In this document: one piece after another, positions 1 through 17,750 of the stretch
Layout of the letters: each line of letters starts with the position of its first letter
Position numbering within the stretch: position 1 is the first letter of the stretch
Assembly (NCBI GenBank): GCA_965637545.1
Contig: OZ281500.1
Coordinates: 16,492,001-16,556,000 of the forward strand
Reading direction: 5' to 3'
DNA: 64,000 bases
From: Phallusia mammillata
Lineage: Eukaryota
The notes under the pieces: model-generated
Database searches by the model: none
What the model was told of the DNA's origin: nothing
Seen by the model: only the letters and a program-made list of their open reading frames with translations
Translations under genes and position numbers: made by a program

Positions 1-224
1 CTGCAACATTATCCAAATATAAGACATCAAACGCCAAAGAGGCAATGTTTTTGATTTTTGTAGTTTAAGCCCAAATATTTACCTAAACTGAACTGCAACT
101 CACATCTTTTTCAACTGTTTTGACCCGGATATATACGAAACCGCCTTTCAAGCGATCGCCAAGAAATGTTTACATGTGAGTTCCTCATTTTCAGTTGTAG
201 GTTTTTTGAAAAATTTCGTTAACA

Positions 225-835
225 ATGGCTTCACCAGTCAAAGAGGAAGACCTTCTAGTTCCAACCTGCATTCACTGGACCACCGACGATGTTGCCAATT
301 GGATTGAAGAGCTCGGCTTTCCCCAATACCGAAACTGCTTCACCACAAATTTAATAAATGGACGAAAATTGGTGTTAGTTAATTCAAGGTAGACATACAA
401 TTTGTTAAAGTAAACTTTACAAAACTTGAAACAGTATTTTGTGAGAAATCTCTCATGATAAACAGTAAATTGAATGTAAAGTGAATAGTATAATCTACTC
501 TTTCTGTAGCACTCCCCAGTATATCTGTACTTAATTTCTCTGCAGCAACAAGCTCGGAAAAAATATTAAAACTATTAACTTTCTACATATTTATGTCAAT
601 AATATGTTAAAAACTTTTTTGCAGTCTTTTGCCAAGACTTGGCATAACAGACTTTGACCACATTCTTTTCATATCTTCAAATGTTCGACAACTTCTTGGA
701 CTTGAGAAACCATTTTGGAACCGAAGTATTGCTGACCCCCCAAACACCCCAATGGGATCGTACTTGGACAAAATCAGCAGAACTGGGCCTTCTGTGGAAA
801 AACTGACTTATTCACAATTTTTAAGACATTGCTAA
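225..835 (+). CDS. SAMD15: SAM-domain protein, SAMD15-like (2 coding exons: 225-388, 625-835)
   Basis: ATG at 225 reads MASPVKEEDLLVPTCIHWTTDDVANWIEELGFPQYRNCFTTNLINGRKLVLVNS. Donor AG|GTAGAC at 389 and acceptor tttgcag at 624 are both phase 2, giving ...NSSLLPRLGITDFDHI...FWNRSIADPP...YLDKISRTGPSVEKLTYSQF. This aligns with recalled SAMD15 ([42 protein letters not shown]). AATAAA near 1170 and 1378. Confidence 0.88.
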
Positions 836-3784
836 CTGTCCTTATTAGTTTGAATTGTGTATAATTCAATTTGTGTGTGGTGCAAATTGAAAACACTAGT
901 TTTGGCCTTGATCTGCATTAGAGATACTAGGTGACATGCAGCAATTTATATTTTATTTTTGAAATGTTTTCTTTGATACATGTCCACTCTATTACAACTT
1001 ATACTTGCACCGACATTCAAACAATACTGCTTTGAATCACTTATTTATTTTATTTCCATCTGCCTATTAGCATAATCTACTATCCGTCCATCACAACATA
1101 TTTTTATTGCACTTTTGAGTGTTTGAATATGTATTGCTGTGAATTCTGTGAACTGTGAATGCCTAAAAAAATAAAAGTTTACATTGCCAAAGTGCTGGTT
1201 TGGACAGGTTAAATCTTAGGCATAATTACAAAACTAAAGTCTAATACAAGTAATTATGCTTAACATTTAAAATTTCGTAATAATGTAATAACTATGGTTT
1301 TACAGGAGTATATTTCACACTGTATTTTTGTTATCACCAGTTTATGCACATAATAACAAAACAGAACATTTAAAAGCAATAAAACAGTGAAAGATATTTA
1401 ATACAGATATATATATATATATACAACCCAAACTATCTTAACATTTTTTATTACCTGTCGATACCGCACGATTCAAGCACGATTGTCCTACCACAGTATA
1501 TGTTAAACGTTGATAGTTGCAAATCGAACCCTACCAGCAAACCAGCATAGCACGGTATCCACTAGATGGCGGTGACGGTCGCGCAGAGATGCACCAAACA
1601 TTTTGAATGACATTTTCCCACACCTGTTGTGGTTCCACGCCGCTGCACCTAATCATGGGAAAAAGGGCGTCCGCCGAATTACACGTGTGTGCGTGACGAA
1701 GCGTGCTCAAGATGCCGCCACTTCGCGACTTCTTGAGGACAGACGGAGCTTTCCAGCTGAGTGCAGAGCTGTCTGCGCGCTTTTTGCTGTGTTTTGCCAC
1801 CGATTAGTGTATAGTGCTAATCACACCACCTCTGCAGTGTTAAGTTCAACAACGTGACAGCAACTGGTCAAACAGCAAAGACAACAACAGCTGGAGATTT
1901 GTACCTTTCGGTATAAAACCCAGTGTTTCGGTTTTGTTTATTAGAGACGTTGATAAATGGTACCTTGGCTTTGACGTTTGTTTTAGCGTGTCACTTGATT
2001 GTGGTCTAACGTAATCGATTTTAATTTATTGAGCGGTTTGAAAGCAGTGTTCGTAGTGTTTTCTAAGCAATTGTTACCAAAGTAAACAAAGAAGTATGTG
2101 AACGCTGACTTATCGTTTTGTGTCATGTGTGACAAGCAAACTTGAAATTGTAACAGACTTGATAAACCAGCTTTTGATTGTATAGAAGTGCAGTCATTAT
2201 TTGTTCTCTGGAGATTCTTACACAGTCTGTTGGCAATGAATGAGCACCCCGCGACCACCATAACAAAGTCACACCAAGAAGTTTTATGTGTGTGATTGAC
2301 AGTTTTTTTGAGGTGAACTTTAAAAATAGTCCATCGCAAAGTTTATTAGAATAACAGCGCCCTAAATTTTAGTGTCGTAAGTCACGTCTGGTCCGTTGTA
2401 AACTGTGCTTGTAAACTGCGTCAGTAAAATTTGATGATCATTTCCCAAAACGTACAGGCAAGGGTTTGAAAGCATATAACTTTGCACCGATTTTGTTGTT
2501 TGAGCGCAACCGTTGGTTGTTTGTGTATGCGGTGGGGCAAAATGCCGTGGGTTTAAACCCACCAAACTGATAATTTTAGAAGTTGCATAGGCGTGCTGGT
2601 TGTGACTAGCGTGCATGTAATGACGGCCGGTGCACATCGCTATGAAAATAAGGCCTTGTTGATTTTGCGTGGGGATGTCCTATCCAAACTCAACCCTAAT
2701 CATAGCAAGAACTGTATAGCTTAAACATATTTCATACAGACAGACAGTTGGTGATCAGTCTTTTAATAAATGGGAAGAAGTTTGGGTTGCAATTTAAACG
2801 GGATTCAGGTGCCTAGAAAATATTTCAAGGTATATTTTGAAAGTGTAAGATTTTGAATTTGGTCTATGTTATTTCTTTAGTGCACAAAAACCTCTTTCAC
2901 AAAAACGAGCGTAGATATTAACTCATAGGTAATTGGGCTCATGATAATAATCGCGTTTTGAGTTTTCTTTGTTTTTACCTTACATACAGCAGACAGCACG
3001 AACATCCGTTTATAGTTTTTTTTCTAATAATTGTAATAATTCTATTAACGTACGTAGTTTCCGTGGCAAGTTATATAAACGTTGGCACGAATACTCTAAC
3101 CTGCCAACAAAGTCTAACTTACGGGATACGGTGGTAACACAAGATTTCCTGACTGTGTCTCACCGCAAGGCTGTATATATTGCTTCCTTGCATGGAGGCC
3201 GTACTTTTGAATTCTTTTAGCCTGTCGTATTTAACACTGGGAGTTCGCGAGAAAACTCGGCAAGGCTGTTATATTAAAACGACGGTTGGAAGTGGACTGC
3301 GCATAAATTTCTGAGTATAAGTTTGGACCCTCGATAGAAATTGTCGTTGAAGCAGTATGGAAAACACCGATACTATTTTGACGCCTTTTGATGCCTTTTG
3401 ATGCCTACGAAGTATGAGGTAGATAAAAATCACCGTTACACCATCTAAATTGTAACTGAAGAATTCCGATTTGGTCAGTTTGTAGTTTAAATAAAGATAA
3501 TTTTGGTTACTTTAAGATATATGTGTGTATATATTGCCAAGAATCATAGATAAAAAGTATAATATCATGAGTTACTTGGCAATGTCCAACTTTTATTTCC
3601 TGTCATTAAAAGTATAGGTAAAGCATTTTGCATTTGCGCAATAAATAAGGTTGTATAAACCAGTCTTTTGTCCTCCAAATACCTGTGAAAGGTTGACCTG
3701 TTTGGTCAAATCAGTTCTTCAGGTGTCAGGCTCGATAACGACTGCAATTATGTGGACAGCCGCTTTAGTGTGAGTTGCAGGCGC

Positions 3785-3850
3785 CGCAATCAATCAGCCC
3801 ACGCCGGCTCGGGCAACGACAGATTGGTTGAAAGGCGATAAAAAGGTAGC
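3785..3850 (+). promoter_or_regulatory. candidate promoter region upstream of RBM24
   Basis: GC-richer patch with an inverted CCAAT box (ATTGG 3823-3827) and TATA-like GATAAAAAGG at 3837-3846. Motif inspection only. Confidence 0.3.
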
Positions 3851-5889
3851 AACTGTAACGCACCTCCGCTCTTTAAAATCCCCTGGTCTAGACGAAACCT
3901 CACTCAGTTGCTGTTAGTTAGTTGTTGGCTGGTGGCTTGCTTAAATTTGAATAGTATCCGCTTATACGTGTGCTGCGTTTATAGGAGGACTTTGTGTCAC
4001 TCTGTTGTGCTATGAAGCATGGTTTTCAAGTAGTGAATAATAATTTTTACTACTGGTTGGCTGTAAAATCGACTACGGTATTGATTTTTTGCATTACTTG
4101 CGTCGTTTCACAGCACATCTGATTGGAGACTGTTTCAGATAATTGACCGTGTTTGTAAACAAAATACAGAATATAGCAGAGGTAGTGTAGCACCTGGTGT
4201 CATAATAAAGCTTTGTCGATATCGCAAATCGACTGTTTTCTCTGTGGTTATTGTTGTAACCGGTTTAGTTTGCAGACGTATAATAGTTTGATCAAGAGAT
4301 GCACGATCTTATCTTGACATATGACAATGTCAGCGATTTATAGATAATCTTAAATAAACTCAGCAAAGAGTACTCTGTGCAACTTTCAAACACAAATTTA
4401 GGTACCTTTTAAATAGAATGCAAGAAATCTATGTATTAATCTGAAAAAAGAAAATTTTGAAATCGGCGATCTTTTAGTATTTAATAAAAAAATTACCTAC
4501 TTAATTTTGTTCTGGTTTTTTTCATTTTAAAGATTTTAGTACCGGGTAAAACCAAATCAATATCTCAATGCTTTTGTTTTTTGGTTTATTGAATGTTGTT
4601 AAAGCAGCGCCAAATTTGGCTTAAATCCTATTCACTGCTTGCTTTATTAATTATTAAAACAGTGAGCTGACGTTCGACCAAAGCCCTGGTGTTTTGTAGG
4701 GACAGGTTCATTCGTTCATCATGTTTTGTGTACTGGTATGTCAGATATATTATTCATGAACCTTTCGCTTATGCGGTAAAGGAAGTAAAATTAGGTCTAA
4801 TGTAAACAGGCGATATAATAACGTTATGTTGTTTAAAATATGGTCTGCGTCAGTTCAGTCTACTTTTGAAAAGGTAACATTTGTGGCCATTAGGGCTATA
4901 ATAATGTTAGACTGCAAGGTTTCCACAAAGCGATTTTATTCCAAAGAAAATACTCCAGGGCATCAAAATTTCTGTGTAAAAATGTTTATTGTCGGAATTG
5001 GACTTACAACAATATGTTATATTTTATTATTTTAGTCTAAAGCTTTGCTGATAATGCTGTAGTGCATCGATCTAGCTTTAAGCCTTCAGTCTTCCTAATT
5101 TGTGAGAGCAGCGCTTCACTGATACGGAGCACCACGGCTCTCGAATCGGCCATTTCCCTTTCTTTGTCCGCTTACCAAGCAAAAGTGGATCTTCTTTCGT
5201 CGCCAGTAGCATCCACTGCCCTTCAATCAGTGAAGGTCGAATTTGAACCGACCAGTAATCTGGACAGCGAGCAGCAGGTCTCAGCAGCGGTAAACCACCA
5301 AGCCGCCATTGTGGATAGTTCTGCCCGTAAACGTAAGGCAAGTCCATTCGTAATCACGTCTACCGAAACCAGCACCATTCCCAACAACGTAACTGAAAAC
5401 GGTTCTCTTGACAACGCGACCGCCAGCAAGATTCCTCGTGTGCTGGCAACGTCACTTGCAGTCACGTCACTAGGCTTGAACTCGCCGACGTTCGTTACGT
5501 CTCTAGGAGCCCAAGCGTCTCTTACTCCTCAGCAAGTCAGCGCTGTGCAGGCGGCGAAACCCCTTAACGCAGCAACGGCAGGCCTAGGCGGTCTCCTTGT
5601 TGCTAGGCTACCACCTGGACATCCTCAGTCCGCACTAGCGTCGCCCGGAGGCACGCTTCTGTCGTCTGGAGCAGTCGGAGCCGGCGGTTTACTTCGTTCC
5701 CAAGCGATAGGTTCGCAGGTTCTTCCCCAAGCCGCTGCCGCCCAGACCAACCTGCTCGCACAGCACCAACTGCAAGCGCAGTTGCTTCTCGCCAACGCCA
5801 CTTCAGCAGCAACGGAAACGGCAAACGCAGTACCTGCAGTAGCCTCGGCATCGCACACCGTCATTAACAGCGCCGGTAAACCGACCAAT

Positions 5890-8800
5890 ATGTCGATCCA
5901 ACAGAAAGACACGACCTACACCAAAATCTTCGTCGGGGGACTTCCCTATCACACTACCGACTGCTCGTTGCGAGATTACTTCGCAGTTTTCGGGGAGATT
6001 GAGGAGGCTGTCGTCATCACAGACCGACAGACTGGAAAGTCGAGAGGTTACGGATTTGTAAGTACTTTGATATGATTTATTTATCGAAATGACTGCGTCT
6101 GGTGTTAAGTGATATATGTCTGTGCTCTGGTGCTTCAACGATGTAACAAAATTGCTGTTACATGGGTGGTTGAACGTTTATTGAGAGCTAATTCTCGTTT
6201 AGGGTTTACAGTAAAACCAAAACTATTCACGAATAATTTTAAGTACCAACATAACCGTGGTTGTATTATAAAGCGATGTACCAGACCCATCAATAACTTA
6301 ACAAGGCTGTAAAGCAAATGATTAGATAAAATGTATAGATTATCAAAAGACACCTCGAGTTTGTTCACTTAACATTATGTATGGATTGGCCTATCCAACC
6401 AATCGTGTTTTAATATCACATTCAACATAACGTGTGGTGTATGCCTGCGCTTCTCTGTGTTACTAGGAAACGCAAGATCACTGTGTTGTCTGGGACACAG
6501 TGTCGTGTAAAACAACCTTTTCGGCGTCTGAATTTTACATATCCTTCTGGGTTGAGCAGCATATACGGTGTATGACTCCAATTCTGACGCCACGTATTCG
6601 GTCTTGGTGCCTGTCTTCTTCAATCGAGAAGTGACATTTCACAATGTGTATTATGTTGAATGGCGTTTGATGCCGTCGTTTTAGTATCTGCACTTTGGAC
6701 ATAGGACTTTTCGGGCAAAAAATATCTGTTGAAATACGGTCGTAGTTGTTTTACCAATCACGTCAACGTAAAACAAATTAACTCCAGTGGTTTGGCAGTT
6801 TGAAGGATGTTTGTATTTGCAACGCACTGAAGTCAAGTACTTCATACAAGTCAATGAATGATTGACAAAAACCGATTGGATTCAAATCTACTCACTTTAG
6901 TAGGAGCGGCTTTAAATGCAACTTTTGGGAAAAGTAATGCTCTGGTGTCCAATGAACCACGTTAGAAGTTTGATATTTAAGTCACTGATCCTGAACGTTG
7001 TACATCGCTTATCGACCCCTTGTCCTCCTAAAAATCGAACTACAACGTACTAAAAGTGTTGTGCGTGTTAATTACTTGTCTTGTCTGAGCCAACAAACAA
7101 GTCGATTACGGTTGGCGTAAAACCATCAGCTCAGGTTAGATACATAATTAAACCGCGTGTCATCGGCCACAGGGCCTTACTTCCAGCTGATGACTCGAAT
7201 CGCTTGGACACTCTTGCCGTACTGTCTGCAAGCCCACATAGATGATTAACTCATGAGCTGAGCAAACAAAACACCCAGAAGTACGCTGTTGGCCTCGCTG
7301 TGTGCTGTACCCTACTGAACATTGTAACAAATTAACCAAAGCGCCCCACAGTGCTTGCGTGTGTACATGTAATGTTTGTGTATAGATCGTACACGTTACG
7401 AGAAGGATTTGAAACACGTTTTACAGCCTTGTAAAGCAACGTTACGGGCGAAACTGTAAAATGGCCAAGACATGTATAAAATTGCAGTTCTATGCATGTT
7501 TTAGAATAATTTTGATACTGTAACGAACCGTACAAAACTTGTTTAACTAAAAATATTGCATCTCCCACCAAGCCTATATGTACTAAAACAATTTGGTCTC
7601 CGTTGTACCACGGACGTAACGTTTGTTGCTGTTTTCACAGAAAAGTAAACCATTCTTTATCTCTTAATGATGTCAAAATAATATTTGTCAGGTAACAATG
7701 ACAAACAAAGATGCTGCAGAGCGAGCTTGCAAGGATCCGAACCCAGTGATTGATGGAAGAAAGGCCAACGTGAACTTGGCCTACATCGGAGCCAAACCTC
7801 GTATTATGCAAACCACAGGTGCGTAAACTAAAAGTCGACTAAACCATAAGGGTGATATTTGAAACCAATGTTCAAAAACAGAAATATACAGACATTAGAA
7901 ACGTTTGGCGTTCTTGGAAACATTTTCTCTAACGCGATGCAACACAACTGCACTGAGGAAATTCTATCCTTATAAGCCACTAAGCCTCTTTTGTGTCTGC
8001 GTTCTGTTTATGCAATGCACAAAATTTGATGATAAAATTGGTCAATTTAGGAATTGATGTGGATTTCGACTTGTGTTTTGTCTTCTCGTTGTGTTGGGAC
8101 GCGGGTATTGAAATGTTTCTTTGTTCTAACATAATCAATAACAACAAGATCCCGGATTTTTGATCAGTTGACTTTGCATTAGGCCACTGGTAATCTTCTA
8201 GATAAAAGTCCCAAAAAATCGATTGAGCTATTCCCACGATGCCTATCACGCACATTAGGAAATGTATTTTTTAATAGCAAACTCATTACTTTAATCTGCA
8301 TCAAACCCCTTTTGGAAAAAAGAGGCAAAGCATGGTGGTTGTAGGCTGTCACAACATATTCTGAAAACTGTATGGTAGAACATATCTTAAATTAAGGATT
8401 TTAGGTTTCGCGCAAGAAACTTGTGATAAAATGTTGCAAAAGCCGTGGATTAAAGCATTTCAATGACAGATGAACTCCGGTTTACAGACCTTCTTTTGCC
8501 TCATCTTATATATCCCGTGGGAAAAGTCTTGTGACACATGTTTGTACGCCGTTTAGTATACGTCAATCGTCGAACAGCTGAAAAGCTTCCATGCACGGTT
8601 ATCGGCTGTTATTCATAAGGACGTATGGCCTACTGGGATCTCACCCACACAAACAAAGCGTTATAGTCTATCGAATCTTCATCTGAAACTCAATTTTGCA
8701 TTGAATTTGTGTTGAATTGTTTGGTCTGTGTCTTACCAACAGCTTTCGCCTTGGTGTATCGCTTTGATACTGCGTAAAAACTGCAGGCAAGTAAAACGGT

Positions 8801-11800
8801 AACGCATTCGTTTTCCTCAAAAGCTATCTAACGAATAGATATCACGTTATGTCATGCGTATTGGTTACGGTCTCTTTTGTGCATTGGTAGTAGGGATCAA
8901 ATAATCGATATTTAGTATCTAGTTAGGTTTCACGTCATTTTTGCCACGATATACTCGTTTTTTACTTGCCGTGGTGTTATTGTAAGAACGTGTAAATTAT
9001 GGGTTACCAAGATGTTGTTTTGCTGCAAACATTCATAATTTTATGCGCTGATACGCTCGGTATGTTAAATGTTAATTTTCGGAGCAAACTGTTTTCCGGC
9101 TCCTAGTTTTTACCCTGCCACTGGCTTAGTCAAGTGCCACAGTTAAATGTTTACTCATAGCTACAGTTTACACTCCTTTACCCGCTGCTTGTGAAAAACC
9201 GTTTAATTTCTTGAGGACTTGGTGCTCGCTTTCTTAGCATGTTGAGAGCTAGCTGGTTGATTTTTATGTACTGAGCCCATCGCGTCAGTCCTTAACTGGT
9301 TTTAAGTGGGGTTCTTCAACCATTTGCACAATCTATTGGTACTAATATTGCGAGTGTAGTATTTTCCAAACCAAGTTGAAAACTACCCTTCAAAATGCCG
9401 AAAAGTCACGTTTAAATGTGCGTCGTATTAGCTTAGTCTTTTCAATAAGAACACATAACTTGGTTGAGGTCAACTAACCACCCAAAGAGTCGATTTATTT
9501 TAGTTTATCAAATTGACTAAAGGCAGTGAATTCGTGATTTATTTCAAAGTACAGCATACGATCCCATCAGTAACTAGTTCATGGCAGGCATCCTTCGCTC
9601 TCTTGTCATTTGATATCATGAACGCTTGATTAGTTACGAAATCACTAACCGTGACACTTGGCAGTTTTAAACCATCGATAGTTTTGGTTTTATTTCTTTT
9701 CGTATTAACTTAAACATAACTCGCTAACTGGTAATAATTAGATAATCAACAGCATCTTTTGATACATTTCAACCAACCATGACAGGGGTACTTAACATAA
9801 AACGTTGCGAAAGAGATGATCATTGACCATTTCGTTTTCAGATTTACGATTATTTCAACATAAACGCGACAGTATTAATGCTTCCGAGTGCACTGGTAAT
9901 CTTATTTTGATCTTGCCGCGGTAGTTTTAATTTTTCCAAGCCCTTATAGCATACTGTTTAGTCTACATTAAGACCATTGTTGCCTGTATAAACAGGTATT
10001 ACCTGCGACCCCACCAATGGGAAATGTCAACAATTTAGCGCGTCAACAAAACATGAATGTTGACCTTGCTGCGATTCACTTTGCTGTTTTTAAAAGACGG
10101 TGGCCTTATTGGCCAATCAAAACAAGTCACGTCCACGCTTGTAACGAAGCCTGCTGGCGACTACTAGTATACCTATCAACTGAAATTATGTGAGGCTAGT
10201 TGAGTTGTAAAAATACACGTTTTTGTCCACCTCCAAAGATCTATTTGTAAGGAGTTTTGATGCATTAGGTATAGATGTCGGTAATAATGTGTAGTACTCC
10301 ACTATACCGACATGGCCTTCTGCCCTGGCAGACTATTTTGGGATGCGAAACTTACTAAACAAAACCGCAGGTCTCGTTCCTCAGTTGGAAATTTAAACTC
10401 GCCTTGTCAACGAAAATTCGTTTTAAACATGAGATTGGAATTCTAAGCATATTCGGAAAAGGGACAACAAAGAACATTAGGGGGTCCCACAGACCGCAAA
10501 AGGCCCGAAAGCGTCCGTTGGTCTCGATGCCGCCTGGAACCGTGTAGGACGCATAAAGATGGCACTTGATGAAACAAAGACTTTCCTAACGCGACAATTG
10601 TTACGAGATAACCTAAGCTGCCTTGCCACGCATGTAAAGGCCGCTATGCAATTCATCTGCTTTATTGTATGTCGCACAGAATGGCTGACAGATTTTGTTA
10701 CGCATCGGGCTTTTATATCAGTCACATAAGGATTGTAGCTTGACTTGTGAAGAGCCTTTGTCACCAGTTATTCGACTGGTTCGCCGTCGGACGTTCAGAG
10801 TTTTAAGTTACGTTTCCACAGATGCTACCTCTTTGTGTTAGTCAGGCGTTCTTTGTGTGTTACACTTTCTCACTGCTGCTAATAGACAAGAGGCCAGCGC
10901 GGGCAGAGGTTTTGTGTCTTGCCTTTTGTGTCGCCCGGTACTGGTTTTACGATAGAGGGCGTGCTTGTTTGTTATTTGAAAGTGTCCGTTGTGTTTTTGC
11001 GACAGTTTGAAAAACAAAACCGAGTTAGTTTATTACTTTTCCAATATTGGAGGTAAATGCATTTTAAAGCTGTCGGACCTGCTTTATGATCGTCTATTAG
11101 GGTTTACGTAACTTTGCATGTGTACTTCGTCTGTAACCTATAGGTTAATTTAAGGTTTCATAATTCCACAAGTCTAGAAATACTTCGTTGTGTAGCAAAC
11201 TCGTTTAAACAACTTATTGGTATTGTGTTGTTTATTGACATTATTTTTGCTTGTTTTGCAGTTGGACTACGTCAGATTCCTCAAGCCTACGTCCCAGCAA
11301 ATCAGTACGTGTAACTTTTATATTTTTTTAAAACCGTAAGCAATCACTTTTCATAACTTCATCGAATCTTAAACCGCCTTGCATGGGAATATTAAATATC
11401 TTTTGCAATATTAAAACGGCGATTAAACACTAAACGTGCAATGAAAACATACTTATTGAATGACACATCCACTTATGTTTCGCAAGTGCTTACGTTTAAA
11501 ACGTTAACTGAAATATGTGTAGCTTGCTCTACCTTTTAATTGAAAATAAATCAGTCAAACTTAGCACAGCTTTAAAGGTCAGTAAATTGCTTGTCCTCCT
11601 TCTATAACGTGCTGGTTTGTGCTTAAATCACCTTGACGATATCCACAACTCGGCAATAATCGTTTCGTTGCTGACATTTATGCCGTGATAAAACACACTT
11701 CACCCTCTAAACATAATTATGTGCAGTTAAATTTAACGTATAGTCGCCTAATTTTGATGTGCGCATGATAGATCGTGATGCAAAACAGAAATATGAATGC

Positions 11801-14800: not shown

Positions 14801-17750
14801 TTCCACACTAGCATTTTTTCAAATTTTTTGTTGAAAATCTTGGTTGCAGTCGGCATGTATCAATGGGGTTGCCGTGGTTACAGTGACGTGTTCATTATTT
14901 TTTGTCACCTTTCCCACCCAGGAGGTCCTACCCCAGGGTTAGTTGTTGGTGTTTGTGTGCGGGGTGCCAAGTGTGAACAAACAGAGGCGAGTTTTTGTTT
15001 GATTTCGTGACATAGGAGCGGTGGCGGTGTAGGAACGACAAACGATTTTAAAACTCAGTGACAGTTGATATGCGAAAATAACATACAACACATGTGCAAA
15101 TTAGTTCTATGCACTGTGCATTCGAAAGTCATGTAACTAGGCCATAGTAATAGTATTGTTTATGACACTGGTTAGAATAATCCCATTTTTCTCCCATTAA
15201 AACACCCAAGCTAATACGATAATATAATATTTTTCCACAAAGCAGTATTCAACACACACCATAACTTATTCAAACAACACATACTGCAACATGTTGTACG
15301 TAGCCAGTAATCAGGTTAATAATTAATTGTCGTACACGACGATATGCTGTAAGTTATTTTCGTCTTGCCCAAGTCAACGTGGCAAATATACGGTGCCAGC
15401 CTGTCAGGAAGGAATTAGTGTAAAGCTAAAACGTAGCGCAGGCACCCAGCCAATCGGGAAGGAATAAAGGCTTTTATATTTTCCGTTAATTCCCGACAAA
15501 CTTTCAGGGCTGCCATACGGTTTTGGTTTATTACAAAAGTAACGTTTGGTATTAAAATTAAGAGCGTGGTAATTAAATGGTTTGAGATTTCCAGTGTTAA
15601 AAATTTGTCTGGTGGTAATTTGTTGTGCAAATGTATAATGTAAGTAATTGGGTCCCATCAACCGAACGCTCACTACAGACACCGACGCAATTTGCACGAA
15701 GAAATAGGGCTTTTTACCAAAATGTACAAACATGTAACAAGCTGTTTTTTTACAGAGCCGTCCCAGCTGTTTACACCCAATACCCCCAGCATGCGGCTGC
15801 TTATGTTACAAACAACGGTCTCCTAATTCCAGCCGCTCATACAGCTCAACCTACATCACCTTTCATCGATTACTCAGCGTACTTTGCCCAGCTATCAGGG
15901 GCATATGCAACTGATGTTGCGGCCACGGCGGGAAACGGTAAGCCATGGTTGTCAATAGTTCTTATCAGAACAAAAAAATCCCTTTTGAACGTAGTCCTAA
16001 TGGTTGTTTGGTCTTGAAAACACGGTTGCTATGTGTCCAACACAAGAAGCGTCTATTTCACTCTTCTTAGCATTTCTTGTTTTTACTTTGTATGTAGAAT
16101 GAGGCACAAGTTGTAATGTCGAAGTGCTTTATTTAACTAACATTACTATAGCATATTGAGCCACTCCATGTGTGACTCAATGGTTTACTGAAACATCCAC
16201 GAAAAATCCAACCTTACACGTTTCATATAACATGGGAAATTAAACTTAATAGTTTCCACGTCCTGGAAACGGGGTATCGTTTGTCTCATTTAACACCTTT
16301 TCATCAAATCATAGTCGAACAAACAAAACTAAACTACCGTAACAACAAAATGTTTTTTTTGCTGTTTGCTGAGTTTATCTATTTCATTCAAGTCGGCAAA
16401 GAAAAAAACGTACCATAAACTTGCAACCATTGCTGTGACATTTTTTTAGGTGGGCTGTCATTATACTTTGATAGTAGAGCTATTTTGATTAGGTTTTTAA
16501 CAATGGTTGTGACGTCATCTGCGCAAAACCACTTTTACATTACGAGGTAAAAATTATTGTACCAACTGTGGTTATAGCAAAAATGCTTATGACAAAAATA
16601 AACAATGTTTAATGGAACTGCCGGATGAGTTGTAACGAGTCGAAGGCAACAAGGTATGTTACATGTAAATGCAGGAACGAAAATAGTAAAACCGGAAAAG
16701 GCACCTCATATCCTTGATGTATTATTCCCTGCCAGTAACCGACACACATAATGCACATAGCCCCAACGAGAGTATAAACTTTGACAACAACTAAATGTGT
16801 TAGTATCCGCAATCAAAACGTTTGTTCTGTGCTTCTCCGTTCAACTGTTTTACTGCGTACATGTGGTACAACACTAAAGGACTACCGTACATACGCTGGG
16901 GAGGTCGTTGTCGTTTCGAAACAACTTCCTCATTAGTACCCAGAAATTACCTACAAATTTCAGTTCAGAGCTGATATAACATTATGTTTCCACTACGCAT
17001 ATTGTGTGGCTTTTTGTGCACACAATTGTGTTGTTAATATCCACTGTATTGTTAATCTTGTTTAATCTTTGGTTAAATATGTTTGCATTATAATGTGAAC
17101 TCTAAAAACGCACAATTATACGACACGAAATAGTTGTGTTAATAAATTGGAGCCCGAACCTTTTGTTCCAGGTGTCAAATTGAAGTCCAGAACAACAGTT
17201 TGACTTGTACTTAAATTAAATTTTTGTTATCAAAACAAACACAGTTGTAAATGATTTGTGCGATGTTGTCCGTCATACCACCAAATTTGTTATTATCAAA
17301 GGAGTATATAGAGTCACTTATGACATTACCTTTAGAATTTTTGCTTGTATTTTTGTGTGAAGATTTGTGCTTCTATGTAGCTATGTAAAGTAAAGTTAAC
17401 AAACTATCGGAACAAAAAACTTATCGAACGCTATGCAGTAATGACACGATTTTATATTTCCAGCTTCATATGCGAACGCATACGCTGCAGCGCCTTTGCA
17501 TCACCACGTCGGTCAACACCCAACAGCAGCCGCTCTTACGCCCACTAGCGTCACTGGAGCAGCTCAACTATTTGCCGCAGCCGCAGCGCCAAACCAAGCC
17601 GCCACCATCAACGCTTATCAGGGACTTCCAGGCTTTCCAGCGGCCAGTGTTGCTGCGGCTTATGCGGCAGGGAACTTGGGCGCCGGCGCTCCGACCCCGA
17701 TGACCCAGCTGACTGCACAGCTGCAACAACAGGCTGCTGACCGACTGTAA
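5890..17750 (+). CDS. RBM24: RNA-binding protein RBM24/RBM38 (single RRM); exons 5890-6057, 7692-7818, 11262-11310, 15756-15937, 17464-17750, with an in-frame upstream extension from about 5041/5185
   Basis: [24 protein letters not shown]...[20 protein letters not shown]|[37 protein letters not shown] is the RBM24/38/SUP-12 RRM. All junctions are GT-AG with consistent phases (0,1,2,1). The Ala/Tyr-rich tail contains 'SPFIDYSAY' and ends [10 protein letters not shown], compared with vertebrate QLQTDRMQ. Confidence 0.93.

What the first reader, a model, noticed from the sequence alone, without database searches (positions are those of the whole stretch)
5041..5892. AUG-free ~280-codon in-frame extension of RBM24: probable non-AUG (GUG) initiation
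Seen: the RBM24 frame is open from the stop at 5038-5040 to the conserved Met at 5890. From 5057 to 5889 there is no ATG in any of the three forward frames; my rough estimate is that 10-13 would occur by chance. The region is GC-rich and coding-like (Ala/Ser/Thr/Gln-rich). A strong polypyrimidine acceptor (tttccctttctttgtccgcttaccaag|, 5179) is followed by CAAAA-GTG-G at 5185, in frame with -3A/+4G. Other near-cognate codons in good context are ACG 5134, CTG 5260 and GTG 5311. Known: all-frame AUG depletion in a translated leader is the signature of leaky-scanning non-AUG N-terminal extensions, whereas an ordinary internal exon would carry out-of-frame ATGs. Inference: one mRNA makes a long GUG-initiated and a short AUG-initiated RBM24.
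Basis: partly seen in the sequence, partly recalled or inferred. Interest (0 to 1): 0.88.

Follow-up and report, generated by a model that had tools for sequence, protein, structure and literature searches.

The report
GUG-started long form of tunicate RBM24
In this sea-squirt genome the muscle/splicing regulator RBM24 carries a conserved, unannotated 235-codon front part with no AUG start; it most likely begins at a conserved GUG codon, so one mRNA would yield a long and a short protein.

Summary
The frame of Met 5890 is open from 5041, and no ATG occurs in any frame from 5057 to 5889. Alone this is weak: 1.2-4 ATGs are expected once composition and coding are allowed for, not 10-13.

Relatives settle it. 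Ten tunicate species carry the same in-frame extension. It is protein-coding: third-position changes exceed first and second, and there are no stops or frameshifts although synonymous sites are saturated. Together they hold 0 ATG in 7,497 nt, against about 32-55 expected. Amino-acid conservation starts at an invariant AA[A/G]GTGGA (window 5182-5189, GTG 5185, A at -3, G at +4).

Four spliced mRNA contigs from relatives have an in-frame stop 15-51 nt upstream of that GTG and no AUG. Two have no other near-cognate codon in between. So an upstream AUG exon is ruled out for those transcripts.

In the window the best acceptor is at 5035|5036, with the stop TAA 5038-5040 inside the exon.

The genome is an ascidian, probably Phallusia mammillata, whose UniProt RBM24-B entry starts at the AUG. 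This is a new member of a known kind. Translation itself is untested.

The parts
5018..5035 (+). T-rich tract plus TAG: the best 3' splice acceptor upstream of the extension. It may be cis or a spliced-leader trans-splice site. The exon would start at 5036.
   Evidence: It is the top-scoring acceptor in the window. An equivalent site lies at -149/-148/-179/-187 from the GTG in four species. 18 RNA-like runs hold all sampled words from 5041 on. The junction itself was not seen in reads.
5038..5040 (+). In-frame stop codon TAA that closes the extension frame on the 5' side, inside the predicted exon.
   Evidence: Relatives have equivalent in-frame stops inside the exon or mature mRNA.
5054..5062 (+). 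Minimal upstream ORF, ATG CTG TAG. It is the only ATG between the acceptor and Met 5890.
   Evidence: Tiny uORFs of 1-5 codons sit at comparable places in 8 of 9 species with enough leader. Two of these are in mature mRNA contigs L016 and L017.
5036..5184 (+). Probable 5' leader within exon A. Its amino-acid sequence is not conserved across species. It contains ACG 5134 in good context, shared only with the closest relative.
5182..5189 (+). AAAGTGGA: the proposed GUG start codon (5185-5187) with A at -3 and G at +4.
   Evidence: It is the only position-conserved 8-mer shared by four species across exon A, including the 95%-identical RRM part. AA[A/G]GTGGA is present in 10 species. The chance that a conserved Val is GTG in all 10, given each species' own Val codon usage, is 4e-8.
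5185..5889 (+). The 235-codon N-terminal extension. It is predicted disordered, rich in Ala/Ser/Leu/Gln, and free of ATG in all frames.
   Evidence: 59% amino-acid identity to P0001 over 332 aa. Differences at codon positions 1/2/3 are 77/60/132. AlphaFold2 pLDDT is below 50. No Pfam domain.
5326..5337 (+). Invariant basic cluster RKRK within [10 protein letters not shown], which resembles a nuclear localisation signal.
   Evidence: Invariant columns in alignments A2 and A3. The function is inferred, not tested.
5890..5892 (+). Conserved AUG (context AATATGT): start of the annotated short RBM24.
   Evidence: UniProt Phallusia mammillata RBM24-B (P0021) and the Ciona entries P0022 and P0023 start here.
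5890..6057 (+). First half of the RRM, up to the donor TTT|gtaagt.
   Evidence: Pfam RRM_1 E=1.8e-11. Splice sites checked.
7692..7818 (+). Exon B, the second half of the RRM.
11262..11304 (+). Micro-exon encoding [15 protein letters not shown].
   Evidence: Found through P0021.
15756..15937 (+). Exon C.
17464..17750 (+). Last coding exon, with stop TAA at 17748-17750.
   Evidence: The assembled CDS is 1,512 nt. The long form is 503 aa and the short form 268 aa.

Best explanation
Exon A of the RBM24 gene of this ascidian starts near 5036, probably at a cis- or spliced-leader acceptor. It carries an in-frame stop (5038-5040), a 3-codon uORF (5054-5062) and then about 830 nt without any AUG.

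The proposed mechanism is as follows. Scanning 40S subunits meet GUG 5185 in a strong context (AAA GUG G). A minority initiate there with Met-tRNAi and make a 503-aa RBM24. Its 235-aa N-terminal part is disordered, holds conserved short motifs and includes an RKRK cluster that resembles a nuclear localisation signal. The rest scan on, unhindered because no AUG exists in any frame, and start at AUG 5890. That gives the annotated 268-aa protein.

Shown: the sequence anatomy, the coding conservation, the conserved GTG and its context, the conserved ATG avoidance, and the in-frame stops in relatives' mature mRNAs. Inferred: initiation at GUG itself, the ratio of the two forms, and any difference in localisation or function.
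For: 1. The frame is open and ATG-free as described.

2. The extension is protein-coding. In four deeply diverged species the frame is kept through indels and there are no stops in 232-253 codons. Differences by codon position are 77/60/132. Synonymous sites in the adjacent RRM are near saturation (38 of 56 third positions differ).

3. A profile search found the extension in more species, including full-length spliced ORFs of 485-572 aa.

4. Mature mRNA contigs L016, L017, L020 and L022 have in-frame stops at -30, -51, -48 and -15 from the conserved GTG. They have no ATG between the conserved GTG and the conserved Met (894, 792, 855 and 666 nt). In L020 and L022 no near-cognate codon lies between the stop and the GTG.

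5. AA[A/G]GTGGA is invariant in 10 species. It is the only positional 8-mer shared across exon A, even though the RRM is 95% identical in protein. The chance of GTG in all 10 under their own Val codon usage is 4e-8.

6. There are 0 ATG in 7,497 nt, against 31.7-54.6 expected.

7. In the window and three genomic relatives the best acceptor lies 148-187 nt upstream of the GTG, with the in-frame stop inside the exon.

8. 18 RNA-like runs from 5 studies hold all sampled words of 5041-6058. Two of the four runs laid show spliced contigs of the neighbouring gene, so those two are RNA.

9. The ascidian 16-nt spliced leader has no AUG and occurs 3,860 times in this genome.

10. The pattern matches the published criteria for leaky-scanning non-AUG extensions (PMC3105428).
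Against: There is no direct evidence of translation: no ribosome profiling, peptide or western data.

For the window species the 5' end of the mRNA was not seen. Read laying placed no contig on 5041-6149, probably because of its filter for human-like conserved sequence. The exon start at 5036 is therefore predicted, not observed.

Weaker acceptors exist downstream of the stop, at 5063, 5090 and 5180. A minor isoform with an upstream AUG exon cannot be excluded.

One relative (L023) has AAA GAA GAG where the others have AAA GTG GAG, yet keeps the extension and an 823-nt ATG-free run. So GUG at this exact site is not obligatory.

No stabilising hairpin follows the GTG.

L020 has a 25-codon out-of-frame uORF starting 56 nt upstream of the GTG and overlapping it.

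GUG is usually an inefficient start, so the long form may be scarce.
Confidence: 0.8

Rival explanations
1. The extension is translated, but from an AUG in an upstream exon that splices in frame into an internal acceptor of exon A (5063, 5090, 5112 or 5180). Under this view, 5036-5889 is ATG-free because in another transcript form it serves as the 5' UTR of the short protein.
For: Acceptor-like AGs lie downstream of the in-frame stop in the window. RNA contigs lie upstream at 4058-4347. A promoter-like GC-rich region lies at about 3780-3900. The window's own mRNA 5' end was not observed.
Against: Four spliced mRNA contigs of relatives carry the in-frame stop 15-51 nt upstream of the GTG and no AUG.

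The internal acceptors are weak and not conserved. L001 has only TTCAG|A, with a poor pyrimidine tract, in its 75-nt open stretch.

Amino-acid conservation does not continue upstream of the GTG.

All 18 runs hold the words of 5041-5184.

That fits none of the better acceptors; only a poor donor paired with a poor acceptor (5111|5112) would be in frame (own reading).

The ascidian spliced leader has no AUG.
Confidence: 0.07
2. Non-AUG initiation occurs, but the main start in this species is another near-cognate codon. Candidates are ACG 5134 (51 nt upstream, -3A/+4G, shared with the closest relative), CUG 5260 or GUG 5311. Several may be used together.
For: ACG with A at -3 and G at +4 lies at exactly -51 in both the window and L001. 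Their peptide similarity reaches back to it. GTG 5311 (IVDSS) is in good context, and its counterpart is the first called start in the distant clade (L019). L023 lacks the GTG at the main site.
Against: Only GTG 5185 is conserved in 10 species, including at its synonymous neighbours. ACG is absent in L004, L005 and the mRNA contigs, where the in-frame stop lies closer than -51. The residues between 5185 and 5311 are conserved in frame.
Confidence: 0.1
3. The extension is not translated. It would be a long 5' UTR whose open frame and conservation reflect RNA-level constraints or a relic of a former coding exon.
For: All database annotations (UniProt Phallusia RBM24-B, NCBI Ciona RBM24) start at the AUG. 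There is no Pfam domain and the predicted structure is disordered.
Against: The codon-position pattern (third > first > second) holds, and indels keep the frame. There is no stop in 232-298 codons in at least 10 species at saturated synonymous divergence, while the other two frames hold 15-17 stops. Invariant peptide motifs are present: RKRK, AGLG.L.V.RLP and SHT.INSAGKP.
Confidence: 0.03

Closest known systems
Conserved non-AUG-initiated N-terminal extensions with leaky scanning (Ivanov et al. 2011, PMC3105428). From my own knowledge, examples include PTEN-L, FGF2, MYC, WT1, BAG1, NELF-B and TRPV6.
   Same: An in-frame extension upstream of the annotated AUG, delimited by an in-frame stop. 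It is under coding selection. A near-cognate codon in Kozak context sits at the 5' edge of conservation. No out-of-frame AUG lies before the main AUG, so two C-terminally identical proteins are predicted (for the criteria).
   Different: The gene (RBM24) and the lineage (tunicates) are not on those lists. RBM24 and RBM38 do not appear in the main text of PMC3105428 or PMC9789052. The extension is long, at 235-298 codons. It is conserved at saturated synonymous divergence. No species has an AUG at the start site. The mRNA probably starts at a trans-splice or cis acceptor, and a minimal uORF precedes the GUG.
EIF4G2 (DAP5/NAT1), exclusive GUG initiation
   Same: A conserved GUG serves as the start codon of a cellular mRNA (PMC3105428).
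   Different: In EIF4G2, out-of-frame AUGs downstream prevent use of the next in-frame AUG, so only one protein is made. Here every AUG is avoided, which predicts two proteins.
Vertebrate RBM24/RBM38 (SEB-4 family) and annotated tunicate RBM24
   Same: The same RRM ([18 protein letters not shown]...GKSRGYGF), the same exon layout and a similar Ala/Gln/Tyr-rich C-terminal part. The window is 100% identical to UniProt Phallusia mammillata RBM24-B over 173 aa.
   Different: Annotated proteins start at the AUG. None of the annotated entries in the profile search covers the extension. Vertebrate Rbm24 changes its subcellular localisation during development (abstract of PMC7463526) without such an extension.
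N-terminal isoforms made by alternative promoters or first exons
   Same: Two proteins that differ only at the N-terminus.
   Different: That mechanism needs an AUG-bearing alternative exon. Relatives' mature mRNAs show a stop and no AUG upstream of the extension.

Membership tests
Non-AUG-initiated N-terminal extension with leaky scanning | An open frame continuous with the main CDS upstream of its AUG, bounded by an in-frame stop, with no in-frame AUG. | tested here: met
   Window: stop at 5038-5040, open to 5890, no ATG. The same holds in 10 species.
Non-AUG-initiated N-terminal extension with leaky scanning | The extension evolves as protein-coding sequence. | tested here: met
   59% amino-acid identity with frame-preserving gaps. 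Differences by codon position are 77/60/132 against 2/1/38 in the RRM. Invariant motifs are present.
Non-AUG-initiated N-terminal extension with leaky scanning | A conserved near-cognate codon in a strong context at the 5' limit of conservation. | tested here: met
   AA[A/G]GTGGA in 10 species. It is the only shared positional 8-mer. P=4e-8 under each species' own Val codon usage. One exception is L023.
Non-AUG-initiated N-terminal extension with leaky scanning | The mature mRNA contains the extension, an upstream in-frame stop and no AUG-bearing exon. | tested here: inconclusive
   Met in four spliced mRNA contigs of relatives. For the window species the evidence is only indirect: runs hold all words of 5041-6058, and the acceptor at 5035|5036 is predicted. 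No contig could be laid on the exon.
Non-AUG-initiated N-terminal extension with leaky scanning | No out-of-frame AUG between the near-cognate start and the main AUG, which gives two isoforms. | tested here: met
   0 ATG in 7,497 nt over 10 species, against 31.7 (codon shuffle) or 54.6 (Markov-1) expected.
Non-AUG-initiated N-terminal extension with leaky scanning | Initiation observed at the near-cognate codon (initiation-site profiling, N-terminal peptide, two protein sizes, start-codon mutants). | not testable with these tools
   No ribosome profiling or proteomic data could be reached. The single read-laying run gave no coverage of the exon.
RBM24/RBM38 (SEB-4) RNA-binding proteins | A single N-terminal RRM with the family's signature sequence, followed by a low-complexity C-terminal part. 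| tested here: met
   Pfam RRM_1 E=1.8e-11. Hundreds of RBM24/RBM38 hits at 81-95% identity over the RRM. The assembled CDS is identical to UniProt Phallusia RBM24-B for 173 aa.

The most novel reading that the evidence does not exclude
The leader may be a conserved start-codon-stringency switch. It consists of a minimal uORF, then a GUG in perfect context, then about 700-900 nt kept free of AUG, then the AUG. This arrangement would set the ratio between a long RBM24 with a nuclear-localisation-like motif and a short RBM24. Changes in eIF1, eIF5 or eIF2 activity during development or stress would then shift RBM24 between nuclear (splicing) and cytoplasmic (mRNA stability and translation) roles. 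Vertebrates achieve this shift by relocalising a single protein.
Probability: 0.2. Interest if true: 0.78.

Novelty: new member of a known kind. Interest (0 to 1): 0.62.

Why it matters
RBM24 is a key post-transcriptional regulator of muscle and heart differentiation, and ascidians are a main model for chordate cardiopharyngeal development. If the long form exists, half of the tunicate RBM24 protein is missing from current gene models. This includes an invariant basic RKRK motif and several other conserved short motifs. Knock-downs or morpholinos aimed at the AUG would also not remove it.

The locus is an unusually clean natural example of selection for leaky scanning. It shows zero AUG in 7.5 kb summed over ten lineages, and an invariant GUG context at saturated divergence. 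It could serve as a reporter for start-codon stringency in a non-vertebrate chordate. It also shows that AUG-only annotation loses conserved proteoforms outside mammals.

Tried and rejected
- Read laying on 150-6149 with four runs laid no contig on the exon. The likely cause is the tool's filter for human-like conserved sequence.

- A search for the window species' own long protein in the protein collection found none. Only the short UniProt form is held.

- The idea that relative P0001 starts with ATG was wrong. It is a TTG chosen by the gene caller.

- Reading AAAAG|TG as a conserved 3' splice site with a split A|TG start codon is rejected. It has A at -3 and T at +1 in all species. The mRNA contigs run through the site unspliced with upstream stops.

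- Reading AAA|GTGGAG as a 5' donor is considered unlikely, because +4 and +5 are poor and the mRNA contigs are continuous across it.

- A TATA box with a transcription start near 5049 was considered. The same T-rich element is better explained as the acceptor tract, because three of the four species show a canonical YAG there.

- A stabilising hairpin downstream of the GTG was not found (z from -0.3 to +1.3).

- No retrocopy or paralogue with the extension exists in the genome.

- Pfam and AlphaFold2 on the extension gave no domain and a disordered prediction. The protein atlas search was uninformative.

- A spliced-leader-donated AUG is excluded, because the ascidian leader has no AUG.

- Papers: no report links RBM24 or RBM38, or Ciona, with non-AUG initiation.

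- Scripts that imported numpy hung and were rewritten without it.
Full report
**1. The observation**

The frame of the conserved Met at 5890 is open back to 5041, just after TAA 5038-5040. The last upstream ATG is at 5054 (ATG CTG TAG, frame +1). No ATG occurs in any forward frame until 5890. This 836-nt gap is the longest ATG-free stretch in the window; the next longest is 336 nt. The other two frames hold 15 and 17 stops.

- A mononucleotide shuffle gives 9.5 and a first-order Markov model 4.1.
- A codon shuffle gives 2.35, with P of zero 0.058.
- Permuting synonymous codons on the fixed protein gives 1.16, with P of zero 0.21.
- TAT and GGG are also absent.

Taken alone, the window shows an odd lack of Met codons and of a start codon. 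It does not show a significant all-frame depletion.

**2. What organism and gene**

It occurs 3,860 times in this 240-Mb genome, against 0 for the reversed control.

A profile search returned UniProt A0A6F9DQL2, 'RNA-binding protein 24-B' of Phallusia mammillata, at 100% identity. My assembled coding sequence matches it for its first 173 residues. After that the database entry reads into the intron following 15937. The window is therefore very probably Phallusia mammillata RBM24.

The exons are:
- ...-6057
- 7692-7818
- 11262-11304
- 15756-15937
- 17464-17750

All have canonical splice sites. The annotated protein, and those of Ciona intestinalis and C. savignyi, start at the AUG. The gene is single-copy and has no retrocopy.

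**3. The extension is coding and old**

A search with the extension alone found three genomic ORFs from marine metagenomes and Logan assemblies: P0001, P0002 and P0004. The frame is kept through many indels. Identity is 59% over 332 residues to the closest.

In codon alignments the extension differs at positions 1/2/3 by 77/60/132. The adjacent RRM differs by 2/1/38 over 56 codons. So synonymous sites are close to saturation and the lineages are effectively independent.

A profile search added four more genomic ORFs (P0005-P0008). It also added full-length spliced ORFs of 467-572 aa from RNA assemblies: P0009, P0011, P0012, P0015, P0018 and P0024.

AlphaFold2 predicts the extension as disordered, and Pfam sees only the RRM. 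Invariant motifs include RKRK (window 5326-5337), AGLG.L.V.RLP and [12 protein letters not shown] just before the Met.

**4. Where translation can start**

In all four genomic sequences first examined, amino-acid conservation begins at K-V-E/D. The nucleotides AAAGTGGA (window 5182-5189) are identical in all four. This is the only position-conserved 8-mer shared by all four anywhere in exon A, even though the RRM part is about 95% identical in protein.

With the further loci, AA[A/G]GTGGA is present in ten species. Given each species' own valine codon usage (GTG 6-43%), the chance of GTG in all ten is 4e-8. The context, A at -3 and G at +4, is the optimal Kozak context.

The four spliced mRNA contigs are decisive against an upstream AUG exon in those species.

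| Contig | In-frame stop relative to the GTG | ATG-free distance from the GTG to the conserved Met |
|---|---|---|
| L016 | -30 | 894 nt |
| L017 | -51 | 792 nt |
| L020 | -48 | 855 nt |
| L022 | -15 | 666 nt |

In L020 and L022 there is no near-cognate codon at all between the stop and the GTG. In those two, the GTG is the 5'-most possible start.

**5. ATG avoidance is conserved**

In the ten species the stretch from the GTG to the Met holds 0 ATG in 7,497 nt. The expected number is 54.6 under a Markov-1 model or 31.7 under a codon shuffle. Synonymous permutation alone, run for the first four species, gives 3.65 expected with a product of P0 of 0.007.

ATG is the only trinucleotide absent in each of the three relatives tested. 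It is also the only one absent in the pooled count of the first four species, where the next rarest is GGG at 6.

This is the configuration that Ivanov et al. describe for extensions in which ribosomes that miss the non-AUG codon reach the main AUG by leaky scanning and produce two isoforms (PMC3105428).

**6. The 5' boundary in the window**

The best acceptor upstream is tattttattattttag|TC at 5035|5036. Equivalent strong sites lie at -148, -179 and -187 from the GTG in L001, L004 and L005. In all four species the in-frame stop lies inside the exon so defined.

Eighteen runs from five studies hold 100% of the sampled 31-mers of 5041-6058. Their contig sets are small, and two of the four runs laid show GT..AG-spliced contigs of the neighbouring gene, so those two are RNA. 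This fits an exon reaching back to about 5040. It does not fit a major acceptor at 5180.

No contig was laid on the exon itself, probably because of the filter for human-like conserved sequence. So the junction at 5036 is a prediction. The ascidian spliced leader has no AUG, so trans-splicing cannot supply a start.

**7. Alternatives**

- An in-frame AUG exon joining a weak internal acceptor remains possible as a minor isoform in the window species (about 7%).
- Other near-cognates may contribute. ACG 5134 sits in good context at exactly -51 in both the window and its closest relative. GTG 5311 is also conserved in a distant clade. One species (L023) has GAA in place of the GTG yet keeps the extension and an 823-nt ATG-free run.
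- A non-translated leader is very unlikely given the coding signature.
- No hairpin follows the GTG.

**8. Comparison and novelty**

This works like, and meets the sequence-level criteria of, the known class of conserved non-AUG N-terminal extensions. Direct observation of initiation is the one defining feature that could not be tested.

RBM24 and RBM38 are not mentioned in the main text of the two catalogues checked. No paper in the library links RBM24 or Ciona to non-AUG initiation. The database proteins are the short form.

I rate it a new member of a known kind. It has unusually strong comparative support and a plausible, untested functional angle: a nuclear-localisation-like motif present only in the long form. 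Vertebrate Rbm24 is reported to change its subcellular localisation during development (abstract of PMC7463526).

Noticed in passing
window 5054-5062; L001:350-364; L004:519-524; L005:398-403; L016:89-100; L017:54-65; L024:1417-1425; L025:1668-1673: The last ATG before the GTG opens a tiny uORF in 8 of 9 species with enough leader. Its peptide is ML, MLVK, M, M, MSV, MSF, MK or M, each followed by a stop. Two are inside mature mRNA contigs. This may be a conserved minimal or 'start-stop' uORF. L020 instead has a 25-codon out-of-frame uORF overlapping the GTG.
   Followed up: partly
L023:1591-1608: One relative (P0006, ENA contig of 485 kb) has GTA GTA AAA GAA GAG AAA where the others have AAA GTG GAG. 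The GTG is missing, yet the extension and an 823-nt ATG-free run are kept. Its start codon is unknown.
   Followed up: partly
L018, L019; P0017, P0020: A more distant clade carries a related extension (TVESL.RKRRASP ... [12 protein letters not shown]) with a different N-terminus. It has an extra in-frame Met (MTSAATTNFF) about 30 codons before the conserved one. The mRNA contig L019 has no ATG at all in its first 808 nt.
   Followed up: partly
window 5134-5136 and 5311-5313: ACG 5134 (-3A/+4G) lies at exactly -51 from the GTG, as it does in L001. GTG 5311 (IVDSS, -3A/+4G) aligns with the GTG called as start in L019. Both are possible secondary starts.
   Followed up: partly
window 3780-3900 and 4058-4347: A GC-richer stretch with CCAAT-like and TATA-like elements lies about 1.3 kb upstream of exon A. 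Short RNA contigs in two runs (X13, X15) lie at 4058-4347. These may be a promoter and outron/pre-mRNA of RBM24, or an independent transcript.
   Followed up: no
window 150-942 and 1734-1943: An upstream plus-strand gene is expressed. Contigs show GT..AG introns at 176-237 and 387-622, and a further contig lies at 1734-1943. One T>C difference at 808 appears in run X5.
   Followed up: no
window 15938-16017 (P0021): The UniProt Phallusia RBM24-B entry (199 aa) ends in [26 protein letters not shown]. This is the translation of the intron after exon C, so the entry is an intron-retaining cDNA and lacks the true C-terminus.
   Followed up: yes
window 11262-11304: A 43-nt micro-exon ([15 protein letters not shown]) lies between the RRM exon and exon C. 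It is easy to miss in ab initio models.
   Followed up: yes
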